This document shows positions 1 through 42,631 of a stretch of 57,802 nucleotides of DNA, piece by piece. The stretch spans positions 1 to 57,802 of the forward strand of contig NIVC01002000.1 in the NCBI GenBank assembly GCA_002269645.1, given 5' to 3'. Source of the DNA: Macrostomum lignano (Eukaryota). Every line of letters begins with the position of its first letter. Within the stretch, counting starts at the first letter, position 1. The translations under genes were made by a program, and so were the position numbers. The notes below the pieces were generated by a model, which was not told the origin of the DNA, searched no databases, and saw only the letters and a program-made list of their open reading frames with translations.

Positions 1-3000
1 ACGCTTCGGTGACGGCTTCTTCCACACTCGCTTCAGCCACTTTCCTAAAGTGCACGCGCCACTTGCGACCGTAGCGTCGACGGTAGACCACTCGGGTGTA
101 GTACCAGCGCACTTGCGACCGTAGTGTCTCTTGTACCAGGTGACCTTGTGCAGGACGCGACGCTTCGGTGACGGCTTCTTCCACACTCGCTTCCACTTCC
201 TAAAGTGCACGCCACTTGCGACCGTAGCGTCGACGGTAGACCACTCGGGTGTAGTACCAGCGCCACTTGCGACCGTAGTGTCTCTTGTACCAGGTGACCT
301 TGTGCAGGACGCGACGCTTCGGTGACGGCTTCTTCCACACTCGCTTCAGCCACTTCCTAAAGTGCACGCGCCACTTGCGACCGTAGCGTCGACGGTAGAC
401 CACTCGGTGTAGTACCAGCGCCACTTGCGACCGTAGTGTCTCTTGTACCAGGTGACCTTGTGCAGGACGCGACGCTTCGGTGACGGCTTCTTCCACACTC
501 TCTTCAGCCACTTCCTAAAGTGCACGCGCCACTTGCGACCGTAGCGTCGACGGTAGACCACTCGGGTGTAGTACCAGCGCCACTTGCGACCGTAGTGTCT
601 CTTGTACCAGGTGACCTTGTGCAGGACGCGAAGCTTCGGTGACGGCTTCTTCCACACTCTCTTCAGCCACTTCCTAAAGTGCACGCGCCACTTGCGACCG
701 TAGCGTCGACGGTAGACCACTCGGGTGTAGTACCAGCGCCACTTGCGACCGTAGTGTCTCTTGTACCAGGTGACCTTGTGCAGGACGCGACGCTTCGGTG
801 ACGGCTTCTTCCACACTCGCTTCAGCCACTTCCTAAAGTGCACGCGCCACTTGCGACCGTAGCGTCGACGGTAGACCACTCGGGTGTAGTACCAGCGCCA
901 CTTGCGACCGTAGTGTCTCTTGTACCAGGTGACCTTGTGCAGGACGCGACGCTTCGGTGACGGCTTCTTCCACACTCGCTTCAGCCACTTCCTAAAGTGC
1001 ACGCGCCACTTGCGACCGTAGCGTCGACGGTAGACCACTCGGGTGTAGTACCAGCGCCACTTGCGACCGTAGTGTCTCTTGTACCAGGTGACCTTGTGCA
1101 GGACGCGACGCTTCGGTGACGGCTTCTTCCACACTCGCTTCAGCCACTTCCTAAAGTGCACGCGCCACTTGCGACCGTAGCGTCGACGGTAGACCACTCG
1201 GGTGTAGTACCAGCGCCACTTGCGACCGTAGTGTCTCTTGTACCAGGTGACCTTGTGCAGGACGCGACGCTTCGGTGACGGCTTCTTCCACACTCGCTTC
1301 AGCCACTTCCTAAAGTGCACGCGCCACTTGCGACCGTAGCGTCGACGGTAGACCACTCGGGTGTAGTACCAGCGCCACTTGCGACCGTAGTGTCTCTTGT
1401 ACCAGGTGACCTTGTGCAGGACGCGACGCTTCGGCGACGGCTTCTTCCAGACCGTTTTCACCCACCTTCGGAAGTGAGATCTCCATTTAATTCCAAATTT
1501 TCGATGATAAACCAGCCGAGTGTAATACCACCTCCAATTCTTAGGATAATGCTTTTTAAACCATCTCAAAGTGTGCACTATAACGTGCGGACGTTTTGGA
1601 GCCGGACGCTTCCACGTGTGCTTTTCCCATAGTTTAAAATGCACCCTCCACTTCCGACCAAATCGATGCTGATAAACAACTCGAGTGTAGTACCAACGCC
1701 AGTTTGTTCCGTAACGTCGCTTGAACCAACCAACCTTGTGCAGGACGCGACGCTTCGGTGACGGCTTCTTCCACACTCTCTTCAGCCACTTCCTAAAGTG
1801 CACGCGCCACTTGCGACCGTAGCGTCGATGGTAGACCACTCGGGTGTAGTACCAGCGCCACTTGCGACCGTAGTGTCTCTTGTACCAGGTGACCTTGTGC
1901 AGGACGCGACGCTTCGGTGACGGCTTCTTCCACACTCGCTTCAGCCACTTCCTAAAGTGCACGCGCCACTTGCGACCGTAGCGTCGACGGTAGACCACTC
2001 GGGTGTAGTACCAGCGCCACTTGCGACCGTAGTGTCTCTTGTACCAGGTGACCTTGTGCAGGACGCGACGCTTCGGCGACGGCTTCTTCCAGACCGTTTT
2101 CACCCACCTTCGGAAGTGAGATCTCCATTTAATTCCAAATTTTCGATGATAAACCAGCCGAGTGTAATACCACCTCCAATTCTTAGGATAATGCTTTTTA
2201 AACCATCTCAAAGTGTGCACTATAACGTGCGGACGTTTTGGAGCCGGACGCTTCCACGTGTGCTTTTCCCATAGTTTAAAATGCACCCTCCACTTCGACC
2301 AAATCGATGCTGATAAACAACTCGAGTGTAGTACCAACGCCAGTTTGTTCCGTAACGTCGCTTGAACCAACCAACCTTGTGCAGGACGCGACGCTTCGGT
2401 GACGGCTTCTTCCACACTCTCTTCAGCCACTTCCTAAAGTGCACGCGCCACTTGCGACCGTAGCGTCGACGGTAGACCACTCGGGTGTAGTACCAGCCCA
2501 CTTGCGACCGTAGTGTCTCTTGTACCAGGTGACCTTGTGCAGGACGCGACGCTTCGGTGACGGCTTCTTCCACACTCGCTTCAGCCACTTCCTAAAGTGC
2601 ACGCGCCACTTGCGACCGTAGCGTCGACGGTAGACCACTCGGGTGTAGTACCAGCGCCACTTGCGACCGTAGTGTCTCTTGTACCAGGTGACCTTGTGCA
2701 GGACGCGACGCTTCGGTGACGGCTTCTTCCACACTCGCTTCAGCCACTTCCTAAAGTGCACGCGCCACTTGCGACCGTAGCGTCGACGGTAGACCACTCG
2801 GGTGTAGTACCAGCGCCACTTGCGACCGTAGTGTCTCTTGTACCAGGTGACCTTGTGCAGGACGCGACGCTTCGGTGACGGCTTCTTCCACACTCTCTTC
2901 AGCCACTTCCTAAAGTGCACGCGCCACTTGCGACCGTAGCGTCGACGGTAGACCACTCGGGTGTAGTACCAGCGCCACTTGCGACCGTAGTGTCTCTTGT

Positions 3001-6000
3001 ACCAGGTGACCTTGTGCAGGACGCGACGCTTCGGTGACGGCTTCTTCCACACTCGCTTCAGCCACTTCCTAAAGTGCACGCGCCACTTGCGACCGTAGCG
3101 TCGACGGTAGACCACTCGGGTGTAGTACCAGCGCCACTTGCGACCGTAGTGTCTCTTGTACCAGGTGACCTTGTGCAGGACGCGACGCTTCGGTGACGGC
3201 TTCTTCCACACTCGCTTCAGCCACTTCCTAAAGTGCACGCGCCACTTGCGACCGTAGCGTCGACGGTAGACCACTCGGGTGTAGTACCAGCGCCACTTGC
3301 GACCGTAGTGTCTCTTGTACCAGGTGACCTTGTGCAGGACGCGACGCTTCGGTGACGGCTTCTTCCACACTCGCTTCAGCCACTTCCTAAAGTGCACGCG
3401 CCACTTGCGACCGTAGCGTCGACGGTAGACCACTCGGGTGTAGTACCAGCGCCACTTGCGACCGTAGTGTCTCTTGTACCAGGTGACCTTGTGCAGGACG
3501 CGACGCTTCGGTGACGGCTTCTTCCACACTCGCTTCAGCCACTTCCTAAAATGCACGCGCCACTTGCGACCGTAGCGTCGACGGTAGACCACTCGGGTGT
3601 AGTACCAGCGCCACTTGCGACCGTAGTGTCTCTTGTACCAGGTGACCTTGTGCAGGACGCGACGCTTCGGTGACGGCTTCTTCCACACTCGCTTCAGCCA
3701 CTTCCTAAAGTGCACGCGCCACTTGCGACCGTAGCGTCGACGGTAGACCACTCGGGTGTAGTACCAGCGCCACTTGACCGTAGTGTCTCTTGTACCAGGT
3801 GACCTTGTGCAGGACGCGACGCTTCGGTGACGGCTTCTTCCACACTCGCTTCAGCCACTTCCTAAAGTGCACGCGCCACTTGCGACCGTAGCGTCGACGG
3901 TAGACCACTCGGGTGTAGTACCAGCGCCACTTGCGACCGTAGTGTCTCTTGTACCAGGTGACCTTGTGCAGGACGCGACGCTTCGGTGACGGCTTCTTCC
4001 ACACTCTCTTCAGCCACTTCCTAAAGTGCACGCGCCACTTGCGACCGTAGCGTCGATGGTAGACCACTCGGGTGTAGTACCAGCGCCACTTGCGACCGTA
4101 GTGTCTCTTGTACCAGGTGACCTTGTGCAGGACGCGACGCTTCGGTGACGGCTTCTTCCACACTCGCTTCAGCCACTTCCTAAAGTGCACGCGCCACTTG
4201 CGACCGTAGCGTCGACGGTAGACCACTCGGGTGTAGTACCAGCGCCACTTGCGACCGTAGTGTCTCTTGTACCAGGTGACCTTGTGCAGGACGCGACGCT
4301 TCGGTGACGGCTTCTTCCACACTCGCTTCAGCCACTTCCTAAAGTGCACGCGCCACTTGCGACCGTAGCGTCGACGGTAGACCACTCGGGTGTAGTACCA
4401 GCGCCACTTGCGACCGTAGTGTCTCTTGTACCAGGTGACCTTGTGCAGGACGCGACGCTTCGGTGACGGCTTCTTCCACACTCTCTTCAGCCACTTCCTA
4501 AAGTGCACGCGCCACTTGCGACCGTAGCGTCGACGGTAGACCACTCGGGTGTAGTACCAGCGCCACTTGCGACCGTAGTGTCTCTTGTACCAGGTGACCT
4601 TGTGCAGGACGCGACGCTTCGGTGACGGCTTCTTCCACACTCGCTTCAGCCACTTCCTAAAGTGCACGCGCCACTTGCGACCGTAGCGTCGACGGTAGAC
4701 CACTCGGGTGTAGTACCAGCGCCACTTGCGACCGTAGTGTCTCTTGTACCAGGTGACCTTGTGCAGGACGCGACGCTTCGGTGACGGCTTCTTCCACACT
4801 CGCTTCAGCCACTTCCTAAAGTGCACGCGCCACTTGCGACCGTAGCGTCGACGGTAGACCACTCGGGTGTAGTACCAGCGCCACTTGCGACCGTAGTGTC
4901 TCTTGTACCAGGTGACCTTGTGCAGGACGCGACGCTTCGGTGACGGCTTCTTCCACACTCTCTTCAGCCACTTCCTAAAGTGCACGCGCCACTTGCGACC
5001 GTAGCGTCGACGGTAGACCACTCGGGTGTAGTACCAGCGCCACTTGCGACCGTAGTGTCTCTTGTACCAGGTGACCTTGTGCAGGACGCGACGCTTCGGT
5101 GACGGCTTCTTCCACACTCGCTTCAGCCACTTCCTAAAGTGCACGCGCCACTTGCGACCGTAGCGTCGACGGTAGACCACTCGGGTGTAGTACCAGCGCC
5201 ACTTGCGACCGTAGTGTCTCTTGTACCAGGTGACCTTGTGCAGGACGCGACGCTTCGGTGACGGCTTCTTCCACACTCGCTTCAGCCACTTCCTAAAGTG
5301 CACGCGCCACTTGCGACCGTAGCGTCGACGGTAGACCACTCGGTGTAGTACCAGCGCCACTTGCGACCGTAGTGTCTCTTGTACCAGGTGACCTTGTGCA
5401 GGACGCGACGCTTCGGTGACGGCTTCTTCCACACTCGCTTCAGCCACTTCCTAAAGTGCACGCGCCACTTGCGACCGTAGCGTCGACGGTAGACCACTCG
5501 GGTGTAGTACCAGCGCCACTTGCGACCGTAGTGTCTCTTGTACCAGGTGACCTTGTGCAGGACGCGACGCTTCGGTGACGGCTTCTTCCACACTCGCTTC
5601 AGCCACTTCCTAAAGTGCACGCGCCACTTGCGACCGTAGCGTCGACGGTAGACCACTCGGGTGTAGTACCAGCGCCACTTGCGACCGTAGTGTCTCTTGT
5701 ACCAGGTGACCTTGTGCAGGACGCGACGCTTCGGTGACGGCTTCTTCCACACTCTCTTCAGCCACTTCCTAAAGTGCACGCGCCACTTGCGACCGTAGCG
5801 TCGACGGTAGACCACTCGGGTGTAGTACCAGCGCCACTTGCGACCGTAGTGTCTCTTGTACCAGGTGACCTTGTGCAGGACGCGACGCTTCGGTGACGGC
5901 TTCTTCCACACTCGCTTCAGCCACTTCCTAAAGTGCACGCGCCACTTGCGACCGTAGCGTCGACGGTAGACCACTCGGGTGTAGTACCAGCGCCACTTGC

Positions 6001-7135
6001 GACCGTAGTGTCTCTTGTACCAGGTGACCTTGTGCAGGACGCGACGCTTCGGTGACGGCTTCTTCCACACTCGCTTCAGCCACTTCCTAAAGTGCACGCG
6101 CCACTTGCGACCGTAGCGTCGACGGTAGACCACTCGGGTGTAGTACCAGCGCCACTTGCGACCGTAGTGTCTCTTGTACCAGGTGACCTTGTGCAGGACG
6201 CGACGCTTCGGTGACGGCTTCTTCCACACTCGCTTCAGCCACTTCCTAAAGTGCACGCGCCACTTGCGACCGTAGCGTCGACGGTAGACCACTCGGGTGT
6301 AGTACCAGCGCCACTTGCGACCGTAGTGTCTCTTGTACCAGGTGACCTTGTGCAGGACGCGACGCTTCGGTGACGGCTTCTTCCACACTCGCTTCAGCCA
6401 CTTCCTAAAGTGCACGCGCCACTTGCGACCGTAGCGTCGACGGTAGACCACTCGGGTGTAGTACCAGCGCCACTTGCGACCGTAGTGTCTCTTGTACCAG
6501 GTGACCTTGTGCAGGACGCGACGCTTCGGTGACGGCTTCTTCCACACTCGCTTCAGCCACTTCCTAAAGTGCACGCGCCACTTGCGACCGTAGCGTCGAC
6601 GGTAGACCACTCGGGTGTAGTACCAGCGCCACTTGCGACCGTAGTGTCTCTTGTACCAGGTGACCTTGTGCAGGACGCGACGCTTCGGTGACGGCTTCTT
6701 CCACACTCGCTTCAGCCACTTCCTAAAGTGCACGCGCCACTTGCGACCGTAGCGTCGACGGTAGACCACTCGGGTGTAGTACCAGCGCCACTTGCGACCG
6801 TAGTGTCTCTTGTACCAGGTGACCTTGTGCAGGACGCGACGCTTCGGTGACGGCTTCTTCCACACTCGCTTCAGCCACTTCCTAAAGTGCACGCGCCACT
6901 TGCGACCGTAGCGTCGACGGTAGACCACTCGGGTGTAGTACCAGCGCCACTTGCGACCGTAGTGTCTCTTGTACCAGGTGACCTTGTGCAGGACGCGACG
7001 CTTCGGTGACGGCTTCTTCCACACTCGCTTCAGCCACTTCCTAAAGTGCACGCGCCACTTGCGACCGTAGCGTCGACGGTAGACCACTCGGGTGTAGTAC
7101 CAGCGCCACTTGTGACCGTAGTGTCTCTTGTACCA
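1..7135 (-). repeat. Coding tandem repeat, 159-bp unit (53 aa RKWRWYYTRVVYRRRYGRKWRVHFRKWLKRVWKKPSPKRRVLHKVTWYKRHYG), about 45 copies
   Basis: 159-bp period read directly; units nearly identical; divergent units at ~1437-1740 and ~2080-2380. Confidence 0.97.
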
Positions 7136-8574
7136 GGTTGCAGTTTTAACATGTGGTTTCCCCCTCCCGCACTCGACCTGGTATTGGAGTTGATGGTTAG
7201 TTTTTTGGTATAACGGAATCCAGGCTTTACCAGAGTTGATTTTCTTTTCCCATTCCTTGAACTTCGTTAGAAACGTTTTTCCGTATATTTTTCTGTAGTG
7301 CCATTTCGTGTACTTTATCAGAGCTTTCTTCTTTTTGAAGACTAGGTTATAGTAAAACCAGCGGAACATCATTTCCTTCTTGTCAGCCGACAGATCCTTG
7401 TTTAAAGCTTTCCACTCTGATAAAGCACTGCTTCCTGCCTTTTTGTACCGGAAGTACCATCGCATAAACTCATTAACATAGGCCTGGCTTCCTTCCTTAT
7501 GCTTTTGCTTGATCTTCCATTTCATCCAGCTGTAAATCCAAGTCGTAGGTCGGTATTTTTTAAAATACCACTTTACATAGTGCGGCTCCCATTTCTTGCC
7601 GTACTTTTTCTTGAATGGCAACTTCTCCCACTCGGAGAACCAGTTTTTGCCGTATTTTTTCTTCATTTGATATTTCTCGTAGTGCGTTCTCCACTTCGAA
7701 CCGAACTTCTTTTTAAACCAGCGAATGCTGTGTACATGAACAGTCACAGAACTGGTAGTAGTGTAGGCTAGTTGCGTTTCCATCAGTTTGTAATATTTCA
7801 TCCAGTGCTTGTTTGTATTAAACCTGTTCAGCCACAACTTGTACTTTGGTAGGAACTTTTTGCCGAACCGCTTCCTGTAGAACCACTTGGTGTATTTGAT
7901 CAGTGCCTGCTTTTTCTGGAATACTAAATTGTAGTAAAACCAGCGGAACTTCTTCTCGCCTTCGTCCTCAGACAGGTCTTTGGTAGCGGATTTCCACGCC
8001 TCAAGCGCTTTGTCACCCTTTTTAGTGTACTTGAAGTACCACCTCATGAACTCGTCAACGTACGCCTTGCTGCCCTCTTTGTGCTTTTGTCTAAACTGCC
8101 ACTTCTTCCAGCTGTAAATCCAGGTGGCCCCTCGGTATTTCCTGAAATACCACTTCACATAGTGGGGCTCCCACTTCTTCCCGTATTTCTTCTTAAATCG
8201 CAACTTCTCCCATTCCGAGAACCAGTCCTTGCCGTACTTCTTCTTCATCAAATGCTGCTCGTAGTGGATTTTCCACTTCAAACCGTAGAGCTTCTTGTAC
8301 TTCCAAATTAGGAAGTGCTTCTCCCAAGCTGAGCCGAACTTCTTCTTGAAAGTAGCTCGCATTCTGTCTTCCGGAGAAACCGGGGAGCCAGTCTTGCTCT
8401 CGGTCCGGTGCAAGTAGGTCTCGAACTTGGTAGAGTCGCCATATTTATTGGTAAACCAGGTCTTCAAATGCGTCTGCCAGCTGCCGGGGTAAAGAGTCTT
8501 GTAGTGCTTGAGGACTATGTAGAACTCCCACGCTTCGCCATAGATCTTCTTGTAGTACTGGATAGTTGAGTGGC
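1..8574 (-). CDS. Giant exon 5 (runs off window) of a putative secreted vWA + K/R/W/Y/H-rich repeat protein; frame broken by seven small deletions
   Basis: Acceptor tctctttag|gc at 8576-8575; phase 1 matches exon 4. Open from 8574 to ~5343, then the same 53-aa peptide continues across ORFs 3705-5447, 2423-3751, 346-2430 and 200-511. Frame-breaking deletions relative to the repeat consensus at ~5342, 3776, 2497, 2296, 406, 211 and 110. Confidence 0.85.
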
Positions 8575-8657
8575 CTAAAGAGATCAATATTGGATTTTTA
8601 TTTGCTGACAGCACATGTAGGCATTATTGAACAGCAAATAAATGCTTATATCCTTAC

Positions 8658-8752
8658 TGTACGACTTAAGCAGGGTAGTCAGGAATGTCGTGTGCTCCAA
8701 GGTTTTGTCCGTGGATGTCTCCTTGCCGCCTTCTTTCACGTTGAAGATGCCC
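8658..8752 (-). CDS. Exon 4 of vWA/repeat protein (GIFNVKEGGKETSTDKTLEHTTFLTTLLKSY)
   Basis: ctttttag| acceptor and |gtaagga donor; 95 nt, phase 2 in and phase 1 out, fits both neighbours; resembles the last vWA strand/helix. Confidence 0.8.
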
Positions 8753-9186
8753 CTAAAAAGGTTTCAATGTGCGGCCACAGTAATCTGGATCTCGGATAGG
8801 GGAATTGGAATTGTGCTTAAGCAGTCCTTGTGTGCAGCCTTTGAGAGCGTGTGCTTAGCGTGATAGCAGGCACCCTTTAGAATTGACCTTGACTGCGGTG
8901 CCCACAGCCCCCCTCATGCGCATAAGGTTGGAATTGGAATTTTAAATTCGGAATTTTGAATAAAATTTTACATCATCCCTTTGATTTCCGATGGGCCGAG
9001 AAAAAATCGATTTTGGTAAATAGGAAATACTCAGAAATTTTAGTGCAGAAAAAATCTACATTCTGTCTGAAGGAATAGTTGAATAACTTGACGTCATCGA
9101 TCACTACCAGTTTAAAAATTACCGTTTGTAGAAACAAAATTCAGGGAAACGTTTCATTTCATGTTTGCTCGAACACAGCGAAAATC

Positions 9187-9963
9187 CGAACCCGGTAGCT
9201 GACCCTGCCACCCTACCCCGAACCCGGTAGCTGACCCTGACACCCTACCCCGAACCCGGTAGCTGACCCTGACACCCTACCCCGAACCCGGTAGCTGACC
9301 CTGACACCCTACCCCGAACCCGGTAGCTGACCCTGACACCCTACCCCGAACCCGGTAGCTGACCCTGACACCCTACTCCGAACCCGGTAGCTGACCCTGA
9401 CACCCTACCCCGAACCCGGTAGCTGACCCTGACCCCTACCCCGAACCCGGTAGCTGACCCTGACACCCTACCCCGAACCCGGTAGCTGACCCTGCCACCC
9501 TACCCCGAACCCAGTAGCTGACCCTGACACCCTACCCCAAACCCGGTAGCTGACCCTGACACCCTACCCCGAACCCAGTAGCTGACCCTGACCCCTACCC
9601 CGAACCCGGTGGCTGACCCTGCCACCCTACTCCGAACCCGGTAGCTGACCCTGCCACCCTACCCCGAACCCGGTACCTGACCCTGACATCCTACCCCGAA
9701 CCCGGTAGCTGACCCTGACACCCTACCCCGAACCCGGTAGCTGACCCTGACACCCTACTCCGAACCCGGTAGCTGACCCTGACACCCTACCCCGAACCCG
9801 GTAGCTGACCCTGACACCCTACCCCGAACCCGGTAGCTGACCCTGACACCCTACTCCGAACCCGGTAGCTGACCCTGACACCCTACCCCGAACCCGGTAG
9901 CTGACCCTGACACCCTACCCCGAACCCGGTAGCTGACCCTGACACCCTACCCTGAACCCGGTA
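9187..9963. repeat. Intronic minisatellite, 32-bp unit cccgaacccggtagctgaccctgacaccctac, about 24 copies
   Basis: Direct inspection; array abuts the exon 3 donor site. Confidence 0.95.
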
Positions 9964-9968
9964 CTCAC

Positions 9969-10234
9969 GAAGACGAGTCCACAACAATCTCGGAAAGGCT
10001 AATCCACTCTTTCATGAGTTTGTGCCGCCACTGCTCTGTCTTGGCCGTGTTGGCGTCCCGCCCGGAGCTCAGCAGCATGACAATCCTCGGTCCGGAGGAC
10101 TTGCCGAACTTTTGCAACTCGTTGTAGGCCGCCTGGATGCCGACGTAATCGTAAACTTTGCCGCTCCGCTTGGCGTGGCGACTCTTGGATAGCTCGATTT
10201 GGAGCCTGGCCAAGATCCGGTCAAGCGACCAGCC
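9969..10234 (-). CDS. Exon 3, second half of vWA-like domain (GWSLDRILARLQ...GIQAAYNELQKFGKSSGPRIVMLLSSG...)
   Basis: ctctccag| acceptor and |gtgagt donor; 266 nt, phase 0 in and phase 2 out. AAYNEL...RIVMLLSSG resembles the vWA 'aL..a...l...r.vvllTDG' segment. Confidence 0.82.
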
Positions 10235-10404
10235 CTGGAGAGCGATTTGAATCAGTGAGCTTCACTTAGCCAGCGGTGTACAGCTGCATGCAGTACATCG
10301 GGCTGCTGGACAGCTTATAAGACTGTCTATAAACCTCACTATTCATGAATTTGATGCTGATTAATTGGTTTCTGTGTGTTAGAGTTCATGTAAGTTTTTG
10401 GGTC

Positions 10405-11160
10405 CAGTACCGGGTTCGGAGTAGGATGTCAGGGTCAGCTACCAGGTTTGGAGTAGGGTGTCAAGGTCAGGTACCGGGTTCAGAATGGGTGTCGGTCAGG
10501 TACCGGGTTCAGAATGGTTGTCAAGGTCAGGTACCGGATTCAGAATGGTTGTCAAGGTCAGGTACCGGTTCAGAATGGTTGTCAATGTCAGGTACCGGGT
10601 TCAGAATGGTTGTCAAGGTCAGGTACCGGATTCAGAATGGTTGTCAAGGTCAGGTACCGGGTTCAGAATGGTTGTCAATGTCAGGTACCGGGTTCAGAAT
10701 GGTTGTCAAGGTCAGGTACCGGGTTCAGAATGGTTGTCAAGGTCAGGTACCGGGTTCAGAATGGGTTTCGGTCAGGTACCGGGTTCAGAATGGTTGTCAG
10801 GGTCAGGTACCGGGTTCAGGGTAGGGTGTCAGCGTCAAGTACCGGGTTCAGAATGGTTGTCAGGGTCAGGTACCGGGTTCAGGACAGGGTGTCAGGGTCA
10901 GGTACCGGGTTCAGAATGGTTGTCAAGGTCAGGTACCGGGTTCAGGACAGGGTGTCAGGGTCAGGTACCGGGTTCAGGACAGGGTGTCAGGGTCAGGTAC
11001 CGGGTTCAGGACAGGGTGTCAGGGTCAGGTACCGGGTTCAGAATGGTTGTCAAGGTCAGGTACCGGGTTCAGAATGGTTGTCAGGGTCAGGTGCCAGGTT
11101 CAGGGTGGGTGTCGGTCAGGTTCCAGGTTCAGGGTGGATGTCAGGGTCAGGTGCCGGGAT
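10405..11160. repeat. Intronic minisatellite, 31/32-bp unit ggtcaggtaccgggttcagaatggttgtcaa, related to the 9187-9963 array in inverted orientation
   Basis: Variant units (gtagggtgtcagggtcagctacc.ggtt) match the reverse complement of the 32-bp unit. Explains spurious ORFs 10345-11256. Confidence 0.93.
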
Positions 11161-11175
11161 CTCAGCCGTCCTCAC

Positions 11176-11398
11176 CTGCTTCAGCGACACAATCGTATAA
11201 GGACGATCCGTGTACTCCACGAAGCCAATTTTAATCTTCTTGGTCTTCACCGGTAGCTTCTTCAAAGCGTCCATGATGTACTTTTTCAGACCTTTGGAGA
11301 TGGCGTTTTTGTCGATTGCCAGCACCAGACTGCCGCTTAGGTCCCCAGCGGACATGTCGCTGACCTTCGAATCCTTCAGCAGCTCCTTGGCGCTCGAG
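11176..11398 (-). CDS. Exon 2, first half of vWA-like domain (SLVLAIDKN...KTKKIKIGFVEYTDRPYTIVSL)
   Basis: cccccccag|c acceptor (phase 2) and cag|gtgagg donor (phase 0). LVLAID and IKIGFVEYTD match vWA beta-A and beta-B strands. Confidence 0.82.
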
Positions 11399-11678
11399 CT
11401 GGGGGGGGCAATGATCGATGGGTTTTTTAAAGAGAGAAAACTCAAGTAGAAGGACGCTACAATGTCAAATAGGGCAGAGTTCGCTGCAAAATGTGCATTG
11501 GCAAGATGGGGAGTTTCAGCTTTTTAGCACTGAACTCCCAATGTTTCTCCTTCTGGACTATCGAATTAAAACTGGAGCAAGCATTTCTGTCGTATTAGTT
11601 TGATGCACTATTTTGTATCCGAGAAAAATTTGAGAAAAAACTATTAGGGAAAATTATTAAGGGAAAATTAAAATTACT

Positions 11679-11900
11679 GTCACGACTGAAAGGTCAGGAG
11701 TTCGATTCTCAACCCACTGAGAACAATTTGTGTCCTCAAGCAAGATACTTAACTCTGCATTGCTTCAGTTCACCCAGCTGTAAAATGGGTGCCAGCATTA
11801 GCTGGGGTAATTGAGGGCGACCCCCAGTCCTTGGACTGAAAAGCAGTTCGTAGCCTTCAGAGATGCGCCGGGCATCTGCCCATTAAGGCAATAAAAAATA
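11679..11900 (+). mobile_element. 5'-truncated tRNA-derived SINE with CORE-like domain
   Basis: B-box-like gagttcgattctc; tgtgtcctcaagcaagatacttaactc...cagctgtaaaatggg resembles the MIR/CORE domain; second copy at 42632-42880. Confidence 0.7.
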
Positions 11901-12085
11901 GTAACGCTGAAAATACCGTTGCATTTTAAAGGCGCCGAATGGGGTTTGACCATAGACAAATTCGGTAGCGAAAAACCAGACTAAAGAGACAAACAGCAAC
12001 CGGCTTCCAACGAAATTTGCACTTTATTTGCGAAATTCGCATTTGACATTAAAACGTCCTTCTAGAATTAATAGGCCGATCTTAC

Positions 12086-12345
12086 CTCCAGCCGCTGGTC
12101 TCAACCACCTCCGAGCTGCTGCTGTATTCGGACGGTGAAGACGAGGACGAAGAGGTCTCGGACACGTGAGTCTCTGTCACCGTGACCGGCCCGTCACCGG
12201 TGTTGACTGTGTAGGTCTTCGTCTCGCGCTTGGCCGTCGCGGTGGGCGCCAACGCCACTATCAGGAGGAGGACTGCCGTCGCATACAGCGGCTGAGGGAG
12301 TGGCCGAGACAACAGCTTTGAGCTTTGAGTCCTTGAGTTCGATTC
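12086..12345 (-). CDS. First visible coding exon: signal-peptide-like segment (YATAVLLLIVALAPTATA|KRE) plus Ser/Thr/Glu linker; no in-frame ATG
   Basis: tggag|gtaagat donor, phase 2, joins exon 2 in frame; hydrophobic h-region with A-x-A cleavage motif. The 5' boundary (ctag|gaa at 12346) is tentative. Confidence 0.7.
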
Positions 12346-12354
12346 CTAGCTGGC

Positions 12355-13163
12355 TCCCAATATCTCTGAGGTTGGCGCTCCCCATATCTGAGGTTGGCGC
12401 TCCCATATCTCTGAGGCTCCCATATCTCTGAGCGCCCCATATCTCTGAGGTTGGCGCTCCCCATATCTCTGAGGTTGGCGCTCCCCATATCTCTGAGGCT
12501 GGCGCCCCCATATCTCTGAGGCTGGCGCCCCCATATCTCTGAGGTTGGCGCCCCATATCTCTGAGGTTGGCGCTCCCCATATCTCTGAGGTTGGCGCTCC
12601 CATATCTCTGAGGTTGGCGCTCCCCATATCTCTGAGGTTGGCGCCCCATATCTCTGAGGCTGGCGCCCCCATATCTCTGAGGCTGGCGCCCTCATATCTC
12701 TGAGGTTGGCGCTCCCATATCTCTGAGGTTGGCGCTCCCATATCTCTGAGGTTGGCGCTCCCATATCTCTGAGGTTGGCGCTCCCATATCTCTGAGGTTG
12801 GCGCTCCCCATATCTCTGAGGTTGGCGCTCCCATATCTCTGAGGCTGGCGCCCCATATCTCTGAGGTTGGCGCCCCATATCTCTGAGGTTGGCGCCCCAT
12901 ATCTCTGAGGTTGGCGCCCATATCTCTGAGGTTGGCGCTCCCATATCTCTGAGGTTGGCGCCCCATATCTCTGAGGTTGGCGCTCCCATATCTCTGAGGT
13001 TGGCGCTCCCATATCTCTGAGGTTGGCACCCCCATATCTCTGAGGTTTGTGCGCCCATATCTCTGAGGCTGGCGCCCCCATATCTCTGAGGTTGGCGCGC
13101 CCATATCTCTGAGGCTGGCGCCCCCATATCCCTGAGGCTGGCGCCCCCATATCTCTGAGGTTG
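12355..13163. repeat. Minisatellite, ~22-24-bp unit ccatatctctgaggttggcgctc(c)
   Basis: Direct inspection; explains overlapping repetitive ORFs 12194-13226. Confidence 0.95.
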
Positions 13164-14757
13164 ACAGTCCCATGTATCTGAATTTTGAATTTTTCTGAGG
13201 CTCGCGCCACTATATACCCAATGCATTAATAAATGATATAGGTTAATTAAGCAATCTCCTCCCAGATAATGCCACCGACTAAGCCACTCTAAATGATACT
13301 GAATTCAGTCAGCAGGCGGTACTGTTATATTGGACTCAGGCTGCAGGTGTTAGGGTACAAGTTGGCTACAATTTCAAAGCTAGAGACCGCATCTAGAAGT
13401 GTCTCCGTGTCGTCCTCTGTGCTCGAACTCAAAGAGAAGTAGCCATGTGGTTCGGGTTGATGGGAAATGAAGGGAGCATGAAGTATGGGGCAGATTCCAT
13501 GAGATCCCCTTTGACTCACAGCGATGCCGCCCAGCCTCATGACGTTGCAATAAAGCAGGGAGCAGTGAAAATCTTCTCTTTGTCAAAAATTATAGTTATT
13601 TGCTTGAACCGAAAACAGACTGAGAGAAGGTCATGTCGACTCGCTGCTTAGAGCTAGCCTTTATTTATGCAGCAATGAAAACAATGATAGGTAGGGTGAG
13701 ACCACGGCAACCATGCAGCCACTGCGGGGGGATCGGCACGGGTCCCTCGAATCGGGTGAGTCTCGCACGGGGTCCATCAGAAACGTGCAGCAGCGATAAG
13801 AGCCGCCAGGCTATGCAATAGGCCAGTCTCTATTCTATTGTGCTAGAATGCTGTCTAAATCTTATTGCCTCTGTAAACCCCTGCTGCATCGCATCTGGAC
13901 AATAAGAGCCCCCCCCTCCCACTCAGCAAGTGGTCCCGAGCGCACACGTGAGGCTCGAGTCACGTTTTTTCTTCCAGCAGATACAGCTAGACAGAATGAA
14001 AAGAAAAATAATGCATACACACTGGTGAGTAGCTGGATCGCAGACGGTAGGGTAGAGACTGAAACTACAATGTTTATAGAGATCCGAGTAGCAATACATT
14101 CTGGAATTTTCTGCGCTGTAAACAACTTTTGTAAAGGACAACTGAATTCGGGCAGAACTGCAGGCTTCAGAAGCAGAGTGAAAGAAAGGGTTCGATGGAG
14201 GGAGAGAGGAATAGGAGACAGGAGAGAGAGACGGAGATGGAGAGACTGGAAGTGGCCCTCCGTTCTGAGCAACACACACGGATACGTTATTTGCTGACTG
14301 GCGATCATTGTTACTTGGATTCGCCCTGCACACTTATTTTCAACTTTGTTTTTTATGCACCTACATGAGGTCTCTCATATACATTTGATATACAGCTACT
14401 AATTTCGTCTTCTCTTCTCGCTCTCGACATCACGAGCCAACTGACATCGCTTCCCGACTTCAATAGTTTGCTCTTTTCTTTGAAATTGCTAAATTTACAT
14501 GAATAAATCGTTTTTATAAAAATGAAACGGGGCCTTCAAATCCATTTTTTCTGAATTTTTCAACATCCTTTTACTACCAGTGGTCCTTTGATGGACCTGC
14601 AAGCGCTCATGTTATGCTCAAACAGGGTGTACAACAACGGCACTGACTTTCCCAATCGTCTGGCATGAACACTCTCTGCGCCTTGGGGTTGGCCCTCATG
14701 GCTGCAGTGAATCGCACGAGACACCCGGCCAATTATCGTGCTCCCAAGCCCCATATA

Positions 14758-16036
14758 CAGGGGCGTCGCCACCGGGGGGACAGGGGGAATGCCCCCCCCC
14801 CCCCAGTAAAAGCTATGGGGGACGCATGCCATGCTTGACCCACCCCACCTTGTGACTGACCCGTTGTGAAAATCAGAAATTTTGCTTCAGGATGCCAAAA
14901 TGCCTTAGGCGCCAAAATTGTGTCTGCAGCGCCAAAATGAGTGTCTGCAGCGCTAAAATGAGTGTCTGCAGCGCTAAAATGAGTGTCTGCAGCGCCAAAA
15001 TGAGTGTCTGCAGCGCCAAAATGAGTGTCTGCAGCGCCAAAATTGTGTCTGCAGCGCCAAAATGAGTGTCTTCAGCGCCAAAATTAGTGTCTTCAGCGCC
15101 AAAATGAGTGCCTGCAGCGCCAAAATGAGTGTCTGCAGCGCCAAAATGAGTGTTTGCAGCGCCAAAATGAGTGCCTGCAACGCCAAAATGAGTGCCTGCA
15201 GCGCCAAAATGAGTGTCTGCGGCAACAAAACGAGTGTCTGCAGCGCCAAAATGAGTGCCTGCAGCGCCAAAATGAGTGTCTGCAGCGCCAAAATGAGTGT
15301 CTGCAGCGCCAAAATGAGTGTCTGCAGCGCTAAAATGAGTGTCTGCAGCGCTAAAATGAGTGTCTGCAGCGCCAAAATGAGTGTCTGCAGCGCCAAAATG
15401 AGTGTCTGCAGCGCCAAAATTGTGTCTGCAGCGCTAAAATGAGTGTCTTCAGCGCCAAAATTAGTGTCTTCAGCGCCAAAATGAGTGCCTGCAGCGCCAA
15501 AATGAGTGTCTGCAGCGCCAAAATGAGTGTTTGCAGCGCCAAAATGAGTGCCTGCAACGCCAAAATGAGTGCCTGCAGCGCCAAAATGAGTGTCTGCGGC
15601 GACAAAACGAGTGTCTGCAGCGCCAAAATGAGTGCCTGCAGCGCCAAAATGAGTGTCTGCAGCGCCAAAATGAGTGTCTGCAGCGCCAAAATGAGTGTCT
15701 GCAGCGCCAAAATGAGTGCATGCAGCGCCAAAATGAGTGCCTGCAGCGCCAAAATGAGTGCCTGCAGCGCCAAAATGAGTGTCTGCAGCGCCAAAATTGT
15801 GTCTGCAGCGCCAAAATGAGTGTTTGCAGCGCCAAAATGAGTGCTTGCAGCGCCAAAATGAGTGCCTGCAGGGCCAAAATGAGTGCCTGCAGCGCCAAAA
15901 TGAGTGTCTGCGGCGACAAAACGAGTGATAACACCGGTCAGGAATTATATTGTACATATAATAATTTATTCATGTTATGCAGAATTCTTGACTTTGTCCC
16001 CCCCCCCCTACGGTAAAATCCATGGCGACGCCCCTG
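14758..16036. mobile_element. Non-autonomous hAT-type element carrying a 21-bp minisatellite
   Basis: TIRs caggggcgtcgcca...tggcgacgcccctg; 8-bp TSD cccatata/cccatatg (7/8 match). Confidence 0.85.
14909..15927. repeat. Minisatellite, 21-bp unit gtgtctgcagcgccaaaatga, with ~377-bp higher-order period
   Basis: Direct inspection; ORFs 15062 and 15439 are offset copies. Confidence 0.95.
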
Positions 16037-16537
16037 CCCATATGAATGTGGTCGCGCACAAAATCGAACCAGGGACTCCAGGTTCTCGACCCCTCCAGGC
16101 CGTTTATTATTTCCGAGTGGTCGCCATGGGGCTTTGGTAGCAATTCTCTCAATATATGCTCGTATACCCGGAAATTTATTACACTCGCTCAGGACCGTAG
16201 GACTTCAACAATCATTCGAAATCTGATACGATATGAAGCTCTGTAGTTCCAACTACCAGTACGAGCTAATAAATCATCTCAGTCAGCAAAAATATCAATC
16301 AGCCAACAGACCCCTTATCAATCGAGTTTAAGCCGAAACGTGTCAACATTTTGAAGTCCTGTAAACACTACACAGTTATCAACCTGTCATGCCAGCCATG
16401 CAATCCCAGAGCTGGCAGGAATATCAACTGCAAAGTTTATTACTGTTTGGAAGTTGGTGCAGAGTTGACCATCTATGCGACCCAAATTAATCTAATACAT
16501 GTACACATGTAGTTGTCACAGAGCTGCGGCTTATCAC

Positions 16538-18055
16538 GTGAACTGGGGTCACTGGGCTATGGTTCACTATGTAATTGAACTGGAGTCATTGGGCCTGATT
16601 CACTACATGTATGTGAACAGGGGTCATTGGGCCTGATTCACTACATGTATGTGAACAGGGGTCATTGGGCTATGATTTACTACATGTATGTGAACAGGGG
16701 TCATTGGGCTATGGTTCACTACATGTATGTGAACAGGGGTCATTGGGCCTGATTCACTACATGTATGTGAACAGGGGTCATTGGGCTATGGTTCACTACA
16801 TGTATGTGAACAGGGGTCATTGGGCTATGATTCACTACATGTATGTGAACAGGGGTCATTGGGCTATGGTTCACTACATGTATGTGAACAGGGGTCATTG
16901 GGCCTGATTCACTACATGTATGTGAACAGGGGTCATTGGGCTATGGTTCACTACATGTATGTGAACAGGGGTCATTGGGCTATGGTTCACTACATGTATG
17001 TGAACAGGGGTCATTGGGCCTGATTCACTACATGTATGTGAACAGGGGTCATTGGGCCTGATTCACTACATGTATGTGAACAGGGGTCATTGGGCTATGG
17101 TTCACTACATGTATGTGAACAGGGGTCATTGGGCTATGGTTCACTACATGTATGTGAACAGGGGTCAGGCTATGGTTCACTACATGTATGTGAACAGGGG
17201 TCATTGGGCCTGATTCACTACATGTATGTGAACAGGGGTCATTGGGCCTGATTCACTACATGTATGTGAACAGGGGTCATTGGGCTATGATTCACTACAT
17301 GTATGTGAACTAGAGTCATTGGGCCTGATTCACTACATGTATGTGAACAGGGGTCATTGGGCCTGATTCACTACATGTATGTGAACAGGGGTCATTGGGC
17401 TATGGTTCACTACATGTATGTGAACAGGGGTCATTGGGCTATGGTTCACTACATGTATGTGAACAGGGGTCATTGGGCCTGATTCACTACATGTATGTGA
17501 ACAGGGGTCATTGGGCCTGATTCACTACATGTATGTGAACAGGGGTCATTGGGCCTGATTCACTACATGTATGTGAACAGGGGTCATTGGGCTATGGTTC
17601 ACTACATGTATGTGAACAGGGGTCATTGGGCTATGGTTCACTACATGTATGTGAACAGGGGTCATTGGGCCTGATTCACTACATGTATGTGAACAGGGGT
17701 CATTGGGCTATGATTCACTACATGTATGTGAACAGGGGTCATTGGGCTATGGTTCACTACATGTATGTGAACAGGGGTCATTGGGCCTGATTCACTACAT
17801 GTATGTGAACAGGGGTCATTGGGCTATGATTCACTACATGTATGTGAACTAGAGTCATTGGGCCTGATTCACTACATGTATGTGAACAGGGGTCATTGGG
17901 CTATGGTTCACTACATGTATGTGAACAGGGTCATTGGGCTATGGTTGACTACATGTATGTGAACAGGGGTCATTGGGCTATGGTTGACTACATGTATGTG
18001 AACAGGGGTCATTGGGCTATGATTCACTATATGTATGTGAACTGGGGTCACTGGG
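16538..18055. repeat. Minisatellite, mixed 38/39-bp units ggggtcattgggc(tatgg|ctga)ttcactacatgtatgtgaaca
   Basis: Direct inspection; internal hairpin gttcac-tacatgtat-gtgaac. Confidence 0.95.
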
Positions 18056-20162: not shown

Positions 20163-20645
20163 CTGCAACGGAGCAGGGCGAGTTGGGTTAGCAACTTGAT
20201 ATTTAAGCGCTATTAGTGAATTAAGCGGATCTACACGCTGCCGAATCTTTTTGGTGAATACTCGTAAATAAGCGACTCTTACAGGATTAATGTGCAATTG
20301 TAAAATGGGCTATTGGGCCACTCTGGGGTAGATTTGGGGGGGGGGGTAAGAGCCAATAAATGAGGTTTGTCTTTATAAAAATACATTAAAATGCTTCAAT
20401 TTAACTTACTACTGAACTGAAGTAGCTTACACGAAAATGTACTGAGTAGCCTATCTATTTAAGGATTAATAGCCACTTTTAGGAGATTAATGGGCGCTTC
20501 TTGAGAGGATCAGAAGGCGATAATTAAGGGGATTAATAGGCGATTTTCGACAGGATTATAAGTGAGCTATTCTTAAGTCGATTCTTTAAAGATTATAGGG
20601 GATTAACAAAAAACGCACACACGAGTAGTTAGCCTTAACACTTAC

Positions 20646-41994: not shown

Positions 41995-42631
41995 CTGAAT
42001 ATTGAAGGGAATAAACATCAATGATGCGGATTCATTTACCTTTCGAAATGGATTAATATACTTAAAATTACCATCATATGATTAATTGGCGAGAATATGA
42101 GGTATTCATTTTGATGCTCAAATAGATCATGCAAGAAGCTCTTGAACAAATTTCTATAGTGCTAACCCTGGATAGCTGAAGCAGATCGCGCTGAGTGGGG
42201 TTTTGCATAGACAAATTCGAACAAGAAAAAAATTGAAAAAATGTTTTAGAACTAGCAGGTGAGATATTGTGAATTTAGAGCTAAAAATGGAAATATTCTC
42301 ATCTCGCCAATGCATTTTGCAACGAAAACATGCAGGCCTCCAGCAAAAACTTGCAAGATTTTGCGAGTGTAGCTTTTGTACCCAATGGTGTCAAATCTTT
42401 TCAAAGCCGCACCTACAGACGCCAGTAACTGACTGCAGATTTTCATTTTACACACAACAGATACGCGAGTTTGTGCTTAAAGTTTTACTTGATTTATCAT
42501 AACTTCAGTTGGGATCAGCCGATTTTTGTAAAGTTGGTCTCAGATTTAGGCTAAACGAGTTCTCCGACGTATTTCAAGTTAAAACTCATGCAACCCTATG
42601 ACAAACTTTTGAGAATACAGCATCAAAGTAA

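What the first reader, a model, noticed from the sequence alone, without database searches (positions are those of the whole stretch)
1..12345. Giant secreted vWA protein with ~45 Lys/Arg/Trp/Tyr/His repeats: candidate underwater glue, coacervate or antimicrobial precursor
Seen: five GT-AG exons join in phase into a signal peptide, S/T linker, vWA-like domain and a >2800-aa cationic-aromatic region (>3100 codons total, still open at the window edge). Each 53-aa unit has 22 K/R, 13 aromatic residues (6 W, 6 Y, 1 F), 3 H and no D/E, plus many KR/RR pairs. Established: cation-pi and Tyr/DOPA chemistry drives mussel-type wet adhesion and coacervation; W/R-rich peptides (indolicidin class) are membrane-active; the known Macrostomum glue protein Mlig-ap1 has K/R-rich repeats but, as I recall, with vWD/C8/C-type lectin domains and not this W/Y-rich unit. 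Inference: a gland-stored structural secretion (adhesive, rhabdite/mucus, cement) or a convertase-processed peptide polyprotein that I do not recognise as described.
Basis: partly seen in the sequence, partly recalled or inferred. Interest (0 to 1): 0.9.

Follow-up and report, generated by a model that had tools for sequence, protein, structure and literature searches.

The report
Giant tryptophan-rich cationic secreted flatworm protein
The flatworm Macrostomum lignano has a real, transcribed gene for a secreted protein of about 3,100 residues, made mostly of 53-residue repeats that are over a third Lys/Arg and a fifth Trp/Tyr; it has no relatives outside this species' genome assembly in the databases searched and no published function, so it is a plausible but untested new kind of sticky or condensing secretion.

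Summary
The observation largely holds. The window is the whole contig NIVC01002000.1 of Macrostomum lignano. On the minus strand, the five GT-AG exons join in phase exactly as in the RNA-based GenBank model BOX15_Mlig034012g1. The 159-bp array has 45 units. The 53-aa unit has exactly the stated composition.

The claim of one continuous frame fails in this window. Indels break the frame in six units, and the contig ends inside the array. A second copy (NIVC01002152.1) has the last exon as one uninterrupted ORF of 2,879 codons (2,863 of them coding, from the splice acceptor). It gives a complete 3,133-aa protein of 415 kDa with pI 11.8. A further copy has at least 73 units.

Old variant units show saturated synonymous change but conserve all six Trp, so the array is coding and constrained. 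The vWA-like domain is supported only by weak, consistent hits. The repeat region has no homologue outside M. lignano, no Pfam or PDB match, and no mention in the literature searched. It is not Mlig-ap1.

The function is untested. The best reading is a polycationic, aromatic extracellular matrix or adhesive material. The idea of a convertase-processed peptide precursor is disfavoured.

The parts
13520..13540 (-). Exon 0. It holds the start codon and MRLGGIA, the n-region of the signal peptide. The donor is GTGAGT at 13519.
   Evidence: The GenBank model P0001 begins MRLGGIA|PLYAT. The sequence was found at 13521-13540 and read directly.
12292..13519 (-). Intron 0, almost entirely a 23-bp minisatellite (12356-13500).
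   Evidence: TRF. The same intron is 3.3 kb in L001 and about 160 bp of repeat in L003.
12086..12291 (-). Exon 1. It encodes the rest of the signal peptide (PLYATAVLLLIVALAPTATA, with A-x-A before KRETK) and the acidic S/T-rich linker.
   Evidence: The acceptor is ccctcag|CCG and the donor is GTAAGA.
11176..11398 (-). Exon 2, first part of the vWA-like domain (DLSGS, LVLAID, KIKIGFVEYTDRPYTIVSLKQ).
9969..10234 (-). Exon 3, middle of the vWA-like domain (...PRIVMLLSSGRD...).
8658..8752 (-). Exon 4, end of the vWA-like segment.
7142..8574 (-). Exon 5, first part. This is a diverged K/W/Y/F-rich region built from about 17-aa [KR][KR][KR][YF]G..W..H[YF] motifs. It contains an internal duplication (aa 344-519 versus 554-713).
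   Evidence: Translation. The duplication shows 116 identical positions of 177 columns. AF2 predicts helices with pLDDT 70-90 from a single sequence.
1..7141 (-). Exon 5, second part. This is the tandem array of 45 units of 159 bp (53 aa). It runs off the contig end, so the 3' end of this copy is not in the window.
5235..5392 (-). Unit 12. One C is lost from the CCC run at unit position 50, giving the first frame break. The -1 frame stops after 19 codons.
   Evidence: The same deletion occurs in unit 43 (456-299), five times in L001, once in L004 and never in L003.
3647..3803 (-). Unit 22, with a 2-nt deletion that breaks the frame.
2375..2533 (-). Unit 30, with a 1-nt deletion and a 1-nt insertion that shift the frame locally.
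1..456 (-). Units 43-45 at the contig end, carrying several indels (-1; -2 and -3; -1/+1).
2053..2374 (-). Old variant unit pair (VGWFKRRYGTNW... and LRWFKKHYPKNW...).
   Evidence: Against the consensus unit, pS is 0.75-0.79 and pN is 0.20-0.24, and all six Trp are kept (computed on the same units in L003).
1411..1734 (-). Second copy of the variant unit pair, showing a higher-order repeat.
   Evidence: The same periodic pattern recurs in L004.
10407..11158 (.). Intron 2 minisatellite (31 bp x 24), inverted relative to the intron 3 array.
9186..9963 (.). Intron 3 minisatellite (32 bp x 24), inverted relative to the intron 2 array. Together the two arrays bracket exon 3.
   Evidence: arms up to 185 nt, 82-89% complementary.

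Best explanation
Shown:
- This is one of four assembled copies of a real, transcribed, six-exon Macrostomum lignano gene.
- Its intact form encodes a protein of about 3,133 aa and 415 kDa with pI about 11.8. It is Cys-free apart from one residue.
- The domain order is: secretory leader, acidic Ser/Thr-rich linker, one vWA-like domain with an incomplete metal site, about 480 aa of diverged Lys/Trp/Tyr/Phe-rich helix-prone motifs, about 43 or more near-identical 53-aa units (42% Lys/Arg, 25% aromatic, no acidic residues), and a basic C-terminal tail.
- The window's own copy is truncated by the contig end. Its frame is interrupted by small indels that are probably assembly errors.

Inferred:
- The protein is exported and stored in a gland secretion as an extracellular polycationic material.
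- The repeat domain acts as a very long multivalent strip. Lys/Arg bind polyanions such as sulfated or carboxylated glycans, the glycocalyx, and mineral or biofilm surfaces. Trp/Tyr provide cation-pi, pi-pi and CH-pi contacts. Together these let like-charged chains cohere or condense in sea water.
- The vWA-like domain and the probably glycosylated linker tie the protein to a partner matrix protein.
- It would therefore work like the cohesive or adhesive polycations of marine glues (Mlig-ap1 KR regions, mussel and sandcastle-worm proteins) but with Trp-heavy chemistry and no disulfide-rich domains.

The gland and the biological use (adhesion, mucus or rhabdite material, egg cement) are unknown.
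For: Gene reality:
- The splice junctions match the RNA-guided GenBank models.
- L003 has an intact 2,879-codon last exon and a complete 3,133-aa CDS with a stop.
- L004 has a 2,889-codon ORF in an array of at least 73 units.
- Only one frame is open across a unit.
- Selection acts at the protein level. Variant units are saturated at synonymous sites (pS 0.75-0.79) but have pN 0.20-0.24, and all six Trp are invariant with Tyr/Phe exchanges.

Secretion:
- The leader is MRLGGIAPLYATAVLLLIVALAPTATA|KR, with a 14-residue hydrophobic core and A-x-A.
- There is no C-terminal hydrophobic anchor.

vWA-like domain:
- Pfam VWA E = 2.8e-4.
- 17 of 18 PDB sequence hits are vWA domains, with collagen VI alpha3 at 9.4e-7.
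- The only non-Macrostomum hits in 1.8 billion proteins are vWA proteins (5e-5 and 4e-4).
- BLASTP against a collagen alpha4(VI)-like vWA domain gives 9e-7.

Composition: R 19.3%, K 16.9%, Y 10.1%, W 9.8%, H 5.1%, one Cys.

Helix-prone, amphipathic stretches: i/i+4 spacing of aromatics, muH up to 0.73-0.80, and helices predicted by AF2.

Precedent in the same animal: the positively charged KR regions of Mlig-ap1 mediate attachment. Heparin blocks attachment and polycations block release (PMC6410801).
Against: - No expression site, secretion product or phenotype is known. I found no paper or held supplement that mentions the gene or its peptides.
- Its peptides were not found in the held parts of the footprint and tail mass-spectrometry tables of PMC6410801. 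Those files are truncated, and the repeat yields only 2-13-residue tryptic fragments, so this is a weak negative.
- The signal peptide was not scored with a dedicated predictor.
- The vWA Pfam score (21.6 bits) is below the curated cut-off (23.8), and the AF2 model of that part has low confidence.
- The AF2 model of the repeat is also low-confidence (pLDDT 59, pTM 0.19).
- Amphipathicity and Cardin-Weintraub motif counts do not clearly exceed shuffled controls.
- The window's own copy does not have an intact frame.
Confidence: 0.5

Rival explanations
1. It is a precursor of a covalently cured structure, such as eggshell, egg cement or another tanned secretion. The abundant Tyr would be oxidised to DOPA or quinone by a tyrosinase and cross-linked to Lys and His, as in trematode eggshell precursors and mussel byssus.
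For: The composition is Tyr 10%, Lys 17% and His 5%, with essentially no Cys, so any cross-linking would have to be non-disulfide. It is a tandem-repeat secreted protein. That Tyr/Lys/His-rich precursors are tanned in flatworm eggshells is established knowledge recalled from memory, not tested here.
Against: As I recall, known flatworm eggshell precursors are small and Gly-rich, not 415-kDa Trp- and Arg-rich proteins. No tyrosinase or related gene lies in the window. No expression data link the gene to oocytes, shell glands or cement glands.
Confidence: 0.15
2. It is a defence product. Either a polyprotein is cut at dibasic sites into Trp/Arg-rich antimicrobial peptides, or the intact amphipathic polycation in mucus kills or agglutinates microbes.
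For: The Trp/Arg-rich cationic composition resembles the indolicidin, tritrpticin and lactoferricin class (knowledge). The segment RRYGRKWRVHFRKWLKRVW has a helical hydrophobic moment of 0.73-0.80. Each unit has 10 dibasic positions.
Against: There is no R-x-K/R-R furin site, no acidic pro-region or spacer, and the dibasic sites lie inside the units. Complete cleavage would give 4-13-residue fragments rather than a defined peptide. A vWA domain and a 480-aa diverged helical region are not features of known antimicrobial-peptide precursors. The amphipathicity is not significant against shuffles (10% of shuffles reach the mean).
Confidence: 0.12
3. The copy in this window is a decaying, redundant homeologue or allele, and its frameshifts are real. 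Only other copies such as NIVC01002152.1 would make the full protein.
For: Six units carry frame-breaking indels. The same 1-nt deletion (unit position 50) recurs in the window, L001 and L004, as a real variant unit spread by unequal exchange would. The DV1 genome is heavily duplicated (PMC5730564).
Against: The recurrent deletion sits in a CCC homopolymer. The other indels cluster at the contig end, typical of consensus errors in identical tandem repeats that cannot be polished. Units around the breaks remain 100% identical to consensus, with no accumulated substitutions. L003 has no indel in its 38 consensus-type units.
Confidence: 0.25
4. It is not a protein-coding repeat at all but a satellite that happens to be open in one frame and was mis-joined to a small vWA gene.
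For: The near-100% identity of units is satellite-like. The GenBank models skip or truncate the array.
Against: The array is in phase with exon 5 without any boundary. It ends in a stop after diverged, still-basic units. The strong dN<<dS signal conserves every Trp. The N-terminal diverged region already uses the same motif. The transcript-based model P0003 joins the N-terminus, repeat units and C-terminus.
Confidence: 0.02

Closest known systems
Mlig-ap1 (Macrostomum lignano adhesion protein 1; Wunderer et al. 2019, PMC6410801)
   Same: Same animal. Giant secreted protein (5,407 aa) with extremely basic Lys/Arg-rich repetitive regions. These are proposed to work through electrostatic binding to negatively charged glycans.
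   Different: No sequence relationship was detected. The Mlig-ap1 KR peptide reported is SRKPRRKNRKSRKP, which contains no aromatic residue. Mlig-ap1 also carries C-type lectin, vWD/C8/TIL and 17 EGF modules with 11% Cys. The present protein has about 20% Trp+Tyr, a vWA (not vWD) domain, one Cys, and none of those domains.
Mussel foot proteins (mfp-1 tandem decapeptides; mfp-3/5) and sandcastle-worm cement polycations (Pc1/2/4/5)
   Same: Secreted, tandem-repeat, Lys-rich and Tyr-rich proteins. Their cohesion, coacervation and wet adhesion rest on cation-pi and aromatic chemistry. The KKPSPK element recalls the Pro/Ser/Lys context of mfp-1. These points are from knowledge, not tested here.
   Different: There is no homology. 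Those proteins depend on Tyr-to-DOPA conversion, are much smaller, are poor in Trp and rich in Gly. Here Trp equals Tyr (about 10% each) and Arg exceeds Lys. DOPA modification is untested.
vWA-domain extracellular matrix proteins (collagen VI alpha chains, von Willebrand factor A1/A3, matrilins; mussel PTMP1 and mollusc Pif/BMSP as vWA-bearing biomaterial proteins)
   Same: A single vWA-like domain whose best matches are collagen VI and vWF A1, in a secreted structural context.
   Different: Similarity is weak (24% identity over about 120 residues; Pfam score below the gathering threshold). The beta4 Asp of the metal site is Ser (MLLSSG versus ITDG). The rest of the protein has no counterpart in these families.
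Trp/Arg-rich antimicrobial peptides (indolicidin, tritrpticin, lactoferricin-type)
   Same: Cationic Trp/Arg composition and a potentially amphipathic helix.
   Different: Those are 13-25-residue peptides released from defined precursors. Here the unit has no flanking processing sites or spacers, and it is embedded in a 415-kDa vWA protein.

Membership tests
von Willebrand factor type A (vWA, PF00092) domain | Significant sequence match to the vWA profile or to vWA domains | tested here: inconclusive
   Pfam gives E = 2.8e-4 and 21.6 bits, below the gathering cut-off of 23.8; it matches residues 107-210 to profile positions 20-120 of 174. Independent searches all point to vWA domains. PDB phmmer finds collagen VI alpha3 at 9.4e-7 and vWF A1 at 0.04-0.09. 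A search of 1.8 billion proteins finds a collagen alpha4(VI)-like protein at 5.1e-5. BLASTP gives 9e-7. I read this as a probable divergent vWA domain.
von Willebrand factor type A (vWA, PF00092) domain | MIDAS metal site: DxSxS after beta1, plus Thr and the Asp of the beta4 'DG'. This is present in integrin-type vWA domains but not obligatory (absent in vWF A1). | tested here: inconclusive
   A perfect DLSGS (aa 95-99) aligns with DGSGS of collagen VI. However, it lies just before the predicted beta1 strand LVLAID (aa 100-105), which is followed by the degenerate KNAIS. The beta4 motif is MLLSSG instead of xxTDG, so that Asp is lost. Metal binding is therefore doubtful.
von Willebrand factor type A (vWA, PF00092) domain | Rossmann-like alpha/beta fold | tested here: inconclusive
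   The single-sequence AF2 model has pLDDT below 50 over most of this segment. No fold search was run because the model is unreliable.
Mlig-ap1-type flatworm adhesive protein | Sequence homology to Mlig-ap1, or its C-type lectin + vWD/C8/TIL + EGF array and Cys-rich core | tested here: not met
   The Pfam scan finds none of these domains. There is one Cys in 3,133 aa. The homology searches returned only copies of this gene itself plus generic vWA hits. The Mlig-ap1 description is taken from PMC6410801. The Mlig-ap1 sequence itself was not available for a direct alignment.
Mlig-ap1-type flatworm adhesive protein | Expression in adhesive gland cells, presence in footprints, and a non-adhesive RNAi phenotype | not testable with these tools
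   No expression data were reachable. Its peptides are absent from the held (truncated) mass-spectrometry tables, which is a weak negative.
Convertase-processed peptide polyprotein / antimicrobial-peptide precursor | Repeated mature peptides delimited by dibasic or R-x-K/R-R sites, usually with acidic spacers or a pro-region | tested here: not met
   There are no R-x-[KR]-R sites per unit. Ten dibasic positions lie inside each unit, giving 4-13-residue pieces if all were cut. There are no D/E residues and no spacer between units.
DOPA-based marine adhesive proteins (mfp-type) | Post-translational Tyr-to-DOPA conversion, with adhesion depending on it | not testable with these tools
   Only the composition (Tyr 10%, Lys 17%) is known.

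The most novel reading that the evidence does not exclude
This is a new class of biological material: a giant, like-charged protein in which Trp, rather than DOPA, partners Arg/Lys in cation-pi bonding. This would let a +40%-charged chain self-condense in sea water and stick to or condense polyanionic surfaces. It would be a lineage-restricted flatworm invention, kept homogeneous by concerted evolution, with copy number varying from about 43 to over 73 units between genomic copies.
Probability: 0.25. Interest if true: 0.85.

Novelty: new variant of a known kind. Interest (0 to 1): 0.6.

Why it matters
If the protein is made as predicted, it would, as far as I know, be among the most Trp-rich large proteins recorded: about 300 Trp and about 1,130 Lys/Arg in one chain. 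It would be a natural test of DOPA-free, cation-pi-driven cohesion at sea-water salt, in an animal where transgenesis, RNAi and adhesion assays already exist. A 53-residue unit is easy to synthesise or express for materials work.

It also illustrates a practical problem. Short-read transcript assembly collapsed the gene to a 958-aa model and to two 'partial' models. Trypsin-based proteomics would not detect the repeat. Such proteins are therefore systematically missed in secretome studies.

Tried and rejected
Ideas tested and dropped:
- Spliced-leader-donated ATG. The M. lignano SL ends in ATG (PMC8629364) and the exon-1 acceptor is in phase. However, the RNA-based model uses an upstream cis exon, so this was dropped as the primary reading.
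- The 'CARD domain' name that UniProt gives to A0A1I8FLB2. There is no CARD hit in Pfam. That entry, and likewise A0A1I8HZJ0 (a separate entry named 'VWFA domain-containing protein'), look like frameshifted ML2 models of the same gene.

Structure and family searches that gave little:
- Pfam and PDB sequence searches of the repeat and diverged regions found nothing credible.
- Two AF2 runs on single sequences gave low-confidence, helix-only models. No fold search was done on them.
- Cardin-Weintraub heparin-binding motifs occur twice per unit, no more than in shuffles.
- The helical hydrophobic moment is suggestive but not significant.

Homologue searches:
- The whole-library HMMER search with P0001 found only M. 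lignano models plus two generic vWA proteins.
- The word-indexed search with the C-terminal units found only BOX15_Mlig025189g1.

Literature:
- Searches for the gene IDs Mlig034012 and Mlig004350, accessions and peptide strings in full texts gave 0 hits.
- Supplements of PMC5730564, PMC6410801, PMC5816591, PMC7336406, PMC12896417 and PMC5977470 gave 0 hits. PMC10786194 has no held supplements.
- Lengerer et al. 2018 (the tail-organ in situ screen) is not held.
- A search for rhabdite histochemistry returned nothing relevant.
Full report
IDENTITY OF THE WINDOW.
The window is the complete 57,802-nt contig NIVC01002000.1 of the Macrostomum lignano Mlig_3_7 assembly, GCA_002269645.1. The gene lies on the minus strand and runs off the low-coordinate end of the contig.

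CHECK OF THE OBSERVATION.
Reading the minus strand and joining exons by script confirms five exons:
- 12291-12086
- 11398-11176
- 10234-9969
- 8752-8658
- 8574->1

All have AG acceptors and GT(A/G)AG donors and join in phases 2, 0, 2 and 1. The joined protein matches GenBank PAA61749/PAA65232 (BOX15_Mlig034012g1, 'partial', 709 aa) residue for residue across every junction. Those GenBank models come from an RNA-seq-guided transcript assembly (StringTie/TACO plus de novo transcripts; PMC5730564). The splicing therefore has transcript support.

1. Start codon. Exon 1 has no in-frame ATG. It is separated from exon 1 by an intron that is almost all 23-bp minisatellite. I first considered an ATG donated by the spliced leader, which ends in ATG (PMC8629364). 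The annotated cis exon makes that unnecessary.

2. Continuity of the frame. TRF finds 44.9 copies of a 159-bp unit over 1-7138. Unit-by-unit alignment shows most units 100% identical to the consensus. Frame-breaking indels occur in:
- unit 12: -1, in a CCC run
- unit 22: -2
- unit 30: -1/+1
- unit 43: the same -1 as unit 12
- units 44 and 45: near the contig end

In this window the frame is open for 1,096 codons of exon 5 and then continues only in pieces.

OTHER GENOMIC COPIES.
Exact-protein look-ups found three further copies in the same assembly.

- L001 (NIVC01001672.1): the same 709-aa model. Its array of about 45 units ends in an N gap and carries five of the same position-50 deletions.
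- L003 (NIVC01002152.1, Mlig004350.g1, PAA60436.1 / A0A267EG50): no N and no indel. Its last exon is one ORF of 2,879 codons. Joining the six exons gives a complete 9,402-nt CDS and a 3,133-aa protein ending ...RVKRTKHRVKKH*. The deposited 958-aa model of this copy simply skips the array. That is the expected result when short-read transcripts collapse identical repeats.
- L004 (NIVC01000086.1, Mlig025189.g1 plus a 368-aa fragment model): an array of at least 73 units that runs beyond the fetched flank. It contains one 2,889-codon ORF and a single -1 shift.

All four copies sit next to the same LLGL-like gene where the flank is visible. I take them to be alleles or homeologues of one locus in this duplicated genome (PMC5730564).

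I judge the window's indels more likely to be consensus errors in an unpolishable identical repeat than real lesions. The reasons are the homopolymer site, the clustering at the contig end, and the absence of accompanying substitutions. This is not proven, and I give the pseudogene reading 0.25.

IS THE ARRAY CODING?
Yes, for four reasons.
- Only one frame is open per unit.
- The array is continuous with the upstream diverged region, which uses the same motif.
- It ends with diverged units and a stop codon.
- The old variant units (window 2374-2053 and 1734-1411, plus the C-terminal units in L003) differ from the consensus at 75-79% of synonymous sites but only 20-24% of non-synonymous sites. 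All six Trp are kept and Tyr exchanges only with Phe.

ANATOMY OF THE PROTEIN (L003 numbering).
- Residues 1-27: leader MRLGGIAPLYATAVLLLIVALAPTATA, with A-x-A before K28. This is inferred to be a signal peptide; no predictor was available.
- Residues 28-77: acidic Ser/Thr-rich linker (pI 4.5 with the leader included).
- Residues ~78-271: vWA-like domain.
- Residues ~272-749: Lys/Trp/Tyr/Phe-rich region made of about 17-aa [KR]3[YF]GxxWxxH[YF] motifs. It contains an internal duplication, 344-519 versus 554-713.
- Residue 750 onward: about 40 consensus 53-aa units, a variant pair, one more consensus unit, and a 130-aa basic tail.
- Whole protein: 415 kDa, pI 11.8, R 19.3%, K 16.9%, Y 10.1%, W 9.8%, H 5.1%. 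There is one Cys and no N-glycosylation sequon.

THE vWA ASSIGNMENT.
The assignment rests on weak but concordant evidence:
- Pfam E = 2.8e-4, just under the gathering score.
- 17 of 18 PDB sequence hits are vWA domains.
- The only non-Macrostomum hits among 1.8 billion representatives are a collagen alpha4(VI)-like protein (5e-5) and another multi-vWA protein.
- BLASTP gives 9e-7.

The metal site is doubtful. A perfect DLSGS lies just before the predicted beta1 strand, and the beta4 Asp is replaced (MLLSSG).

AF2 on single sequences gave no usable fold for this part. For the basic regions it predicted only helices. Confidence was moderate for the diverged part and low for the canonical units.

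RELATIVES AND LITERATURE.
Nothing outside M. lignano matches the repeat region:
- word-indexed searches
- the exhaustive HMMER search
- Pfam
- PDB

These databases may lack other Macrostomum transcriptomes. 'Orphan' here means 'no relative in what was searched'.

No paper in the held library contains the gene IDs, accessions or characteristic peptides. None of the held supplements I searched does either.

The protein is not Mlig-ap1. That protein's KR regions (peptide SRKPRRKNRKSRKP) flank C-type lectin, vWD/C8/TIL and EGF modules rich in Cys (PMC6410801). None of these is present here.

HOW IT MOST LIKELY WORKS.
Shown: a transcribed gene for a huge, leader-bearing, Cys-free polycation. It has conserved Trp/Tyr spacing and one vWA-like domain.

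Inferred: it is a gland-stored extracellular material in which each part has a role.
- The repeat domain is a multivalent polycation-aromatic strip. Lys/Arg bind polyanionic glycans and surfaces. Trp/Tyr give cation-pi, pi-pi and sugar-stacking contacts. These contacts can overcome like-charge repulsion at marine ionic strength.
- The vWA-like domain and the linker connect the protein to a partner.

The in-species precedent is Mlig-ap1, whose positive charge is central to attachment and whose function is blocked by heparin. I give this reading 0.5.

RIVALS.
- A tyrosinase-tanned eggshell or cement precursor (0.15).
- An antimicrobial product (0.12). The processed-polyprotein version is disfavoured because there are no furin-type sites, no spacers, and dibasic pairs every few residues inside the unit.
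- A non-coding satellite is effectively excluded (0.02).

VERDICT.
The sequence feature is real and remarkable in composition. The functional claims remain hypotheses.

I file it as a new variant of a known kind: giant cationic tandem-repeat secreted proteins of marine invertebrate secretions. It is distinguished by about 10% Trp, a vWA-like domain and the absence of Cys-rich modules. Interest is 0.6. It is directly testable in a tractable model animal, but there is as yet no evidence on where it is expressed or what it does.

Noticed in passing
window 9186-9963 and 10407-11158 (also L001 14859-15618 / 16055-16829; L003 11740-11974 / 12438-12831): Exon 3 (266 nt, not a multiple of 3) is bracketed by inverted arrays of the same 31-32-bp minisatellite in introns 2 and 3. 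Arms are up to 185 nt and 82-89% complementary. They could pair in the pre-mRNA and loop out the exon, favouring skipping or back-splicing. The arrangement is conserved in three copies, though array length varies.
   Followed up: partly
window 12356-13500 (intron 0): A 23-bp minisatellite fills the first intron. It is about 1.1 kb here, 3.3 kb in L001 and about 160 bp in L003, so intron length is highly polymorphic between copies.
   Followed up: partly
L004 (NIVC01000086.1) 3-11677 versus L003 14880-21692: The coding array differs greatly in length between genomic copies: at least 73 units versus about 43. Variant-unit pairs recur periodically, indicating a higher-order repeat. The predicted protein size may therefore range from about 3,100 to over 4,500 aa.
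   Followed up: partly
window 20642-25354, minus strand: An LLGL (lethal giant larvae)-like WD40 gene lies upstream of the finding. Two near-identical segments (22488-23637 and 24201-25354) encode the same peptides, suggesting a local tandem duplication or mis-assembly. It also has a Lys/Glu-rich low-complexity insert.
   Followed up: partly
window 41127-44230, minus strand: A gene for an amiloride-sensitive sodium channel (ASC/DEG/ENaC family, Pfam E = 5.8e-30).
   Followed up: partly
window 46051-49084 and 51421-52495, minus strand: A Penelope-like retroelement ORF with a reverse transcriptase plus a GIY-YIG endonuclease domain (both Pfam hits fall below the curated cut-offs), and two RNase H-bearing retroelement fragments.
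   Followed up: partly
window 14974-16016: A tandem repeat of about 21 bp that is open in several frames on both strands (HSFWRCR / THFGAAD / LILALQT peptides). It also occurs upstream of the gene in L001 (7627-8625). It is probably non-coding minisatellite.
   Followed up: no
UniProt entries A0A1I8FLB2 and A0A1I8HZJ0 (P0002, P0005): The older ML2-assembly models of this gene are frameshifted or mis-spliced. One is auto-named 'CARD domain-containing protein'. Pfam gives no CARD hit on the region, so the name looks spurious.
   Followed up: partly
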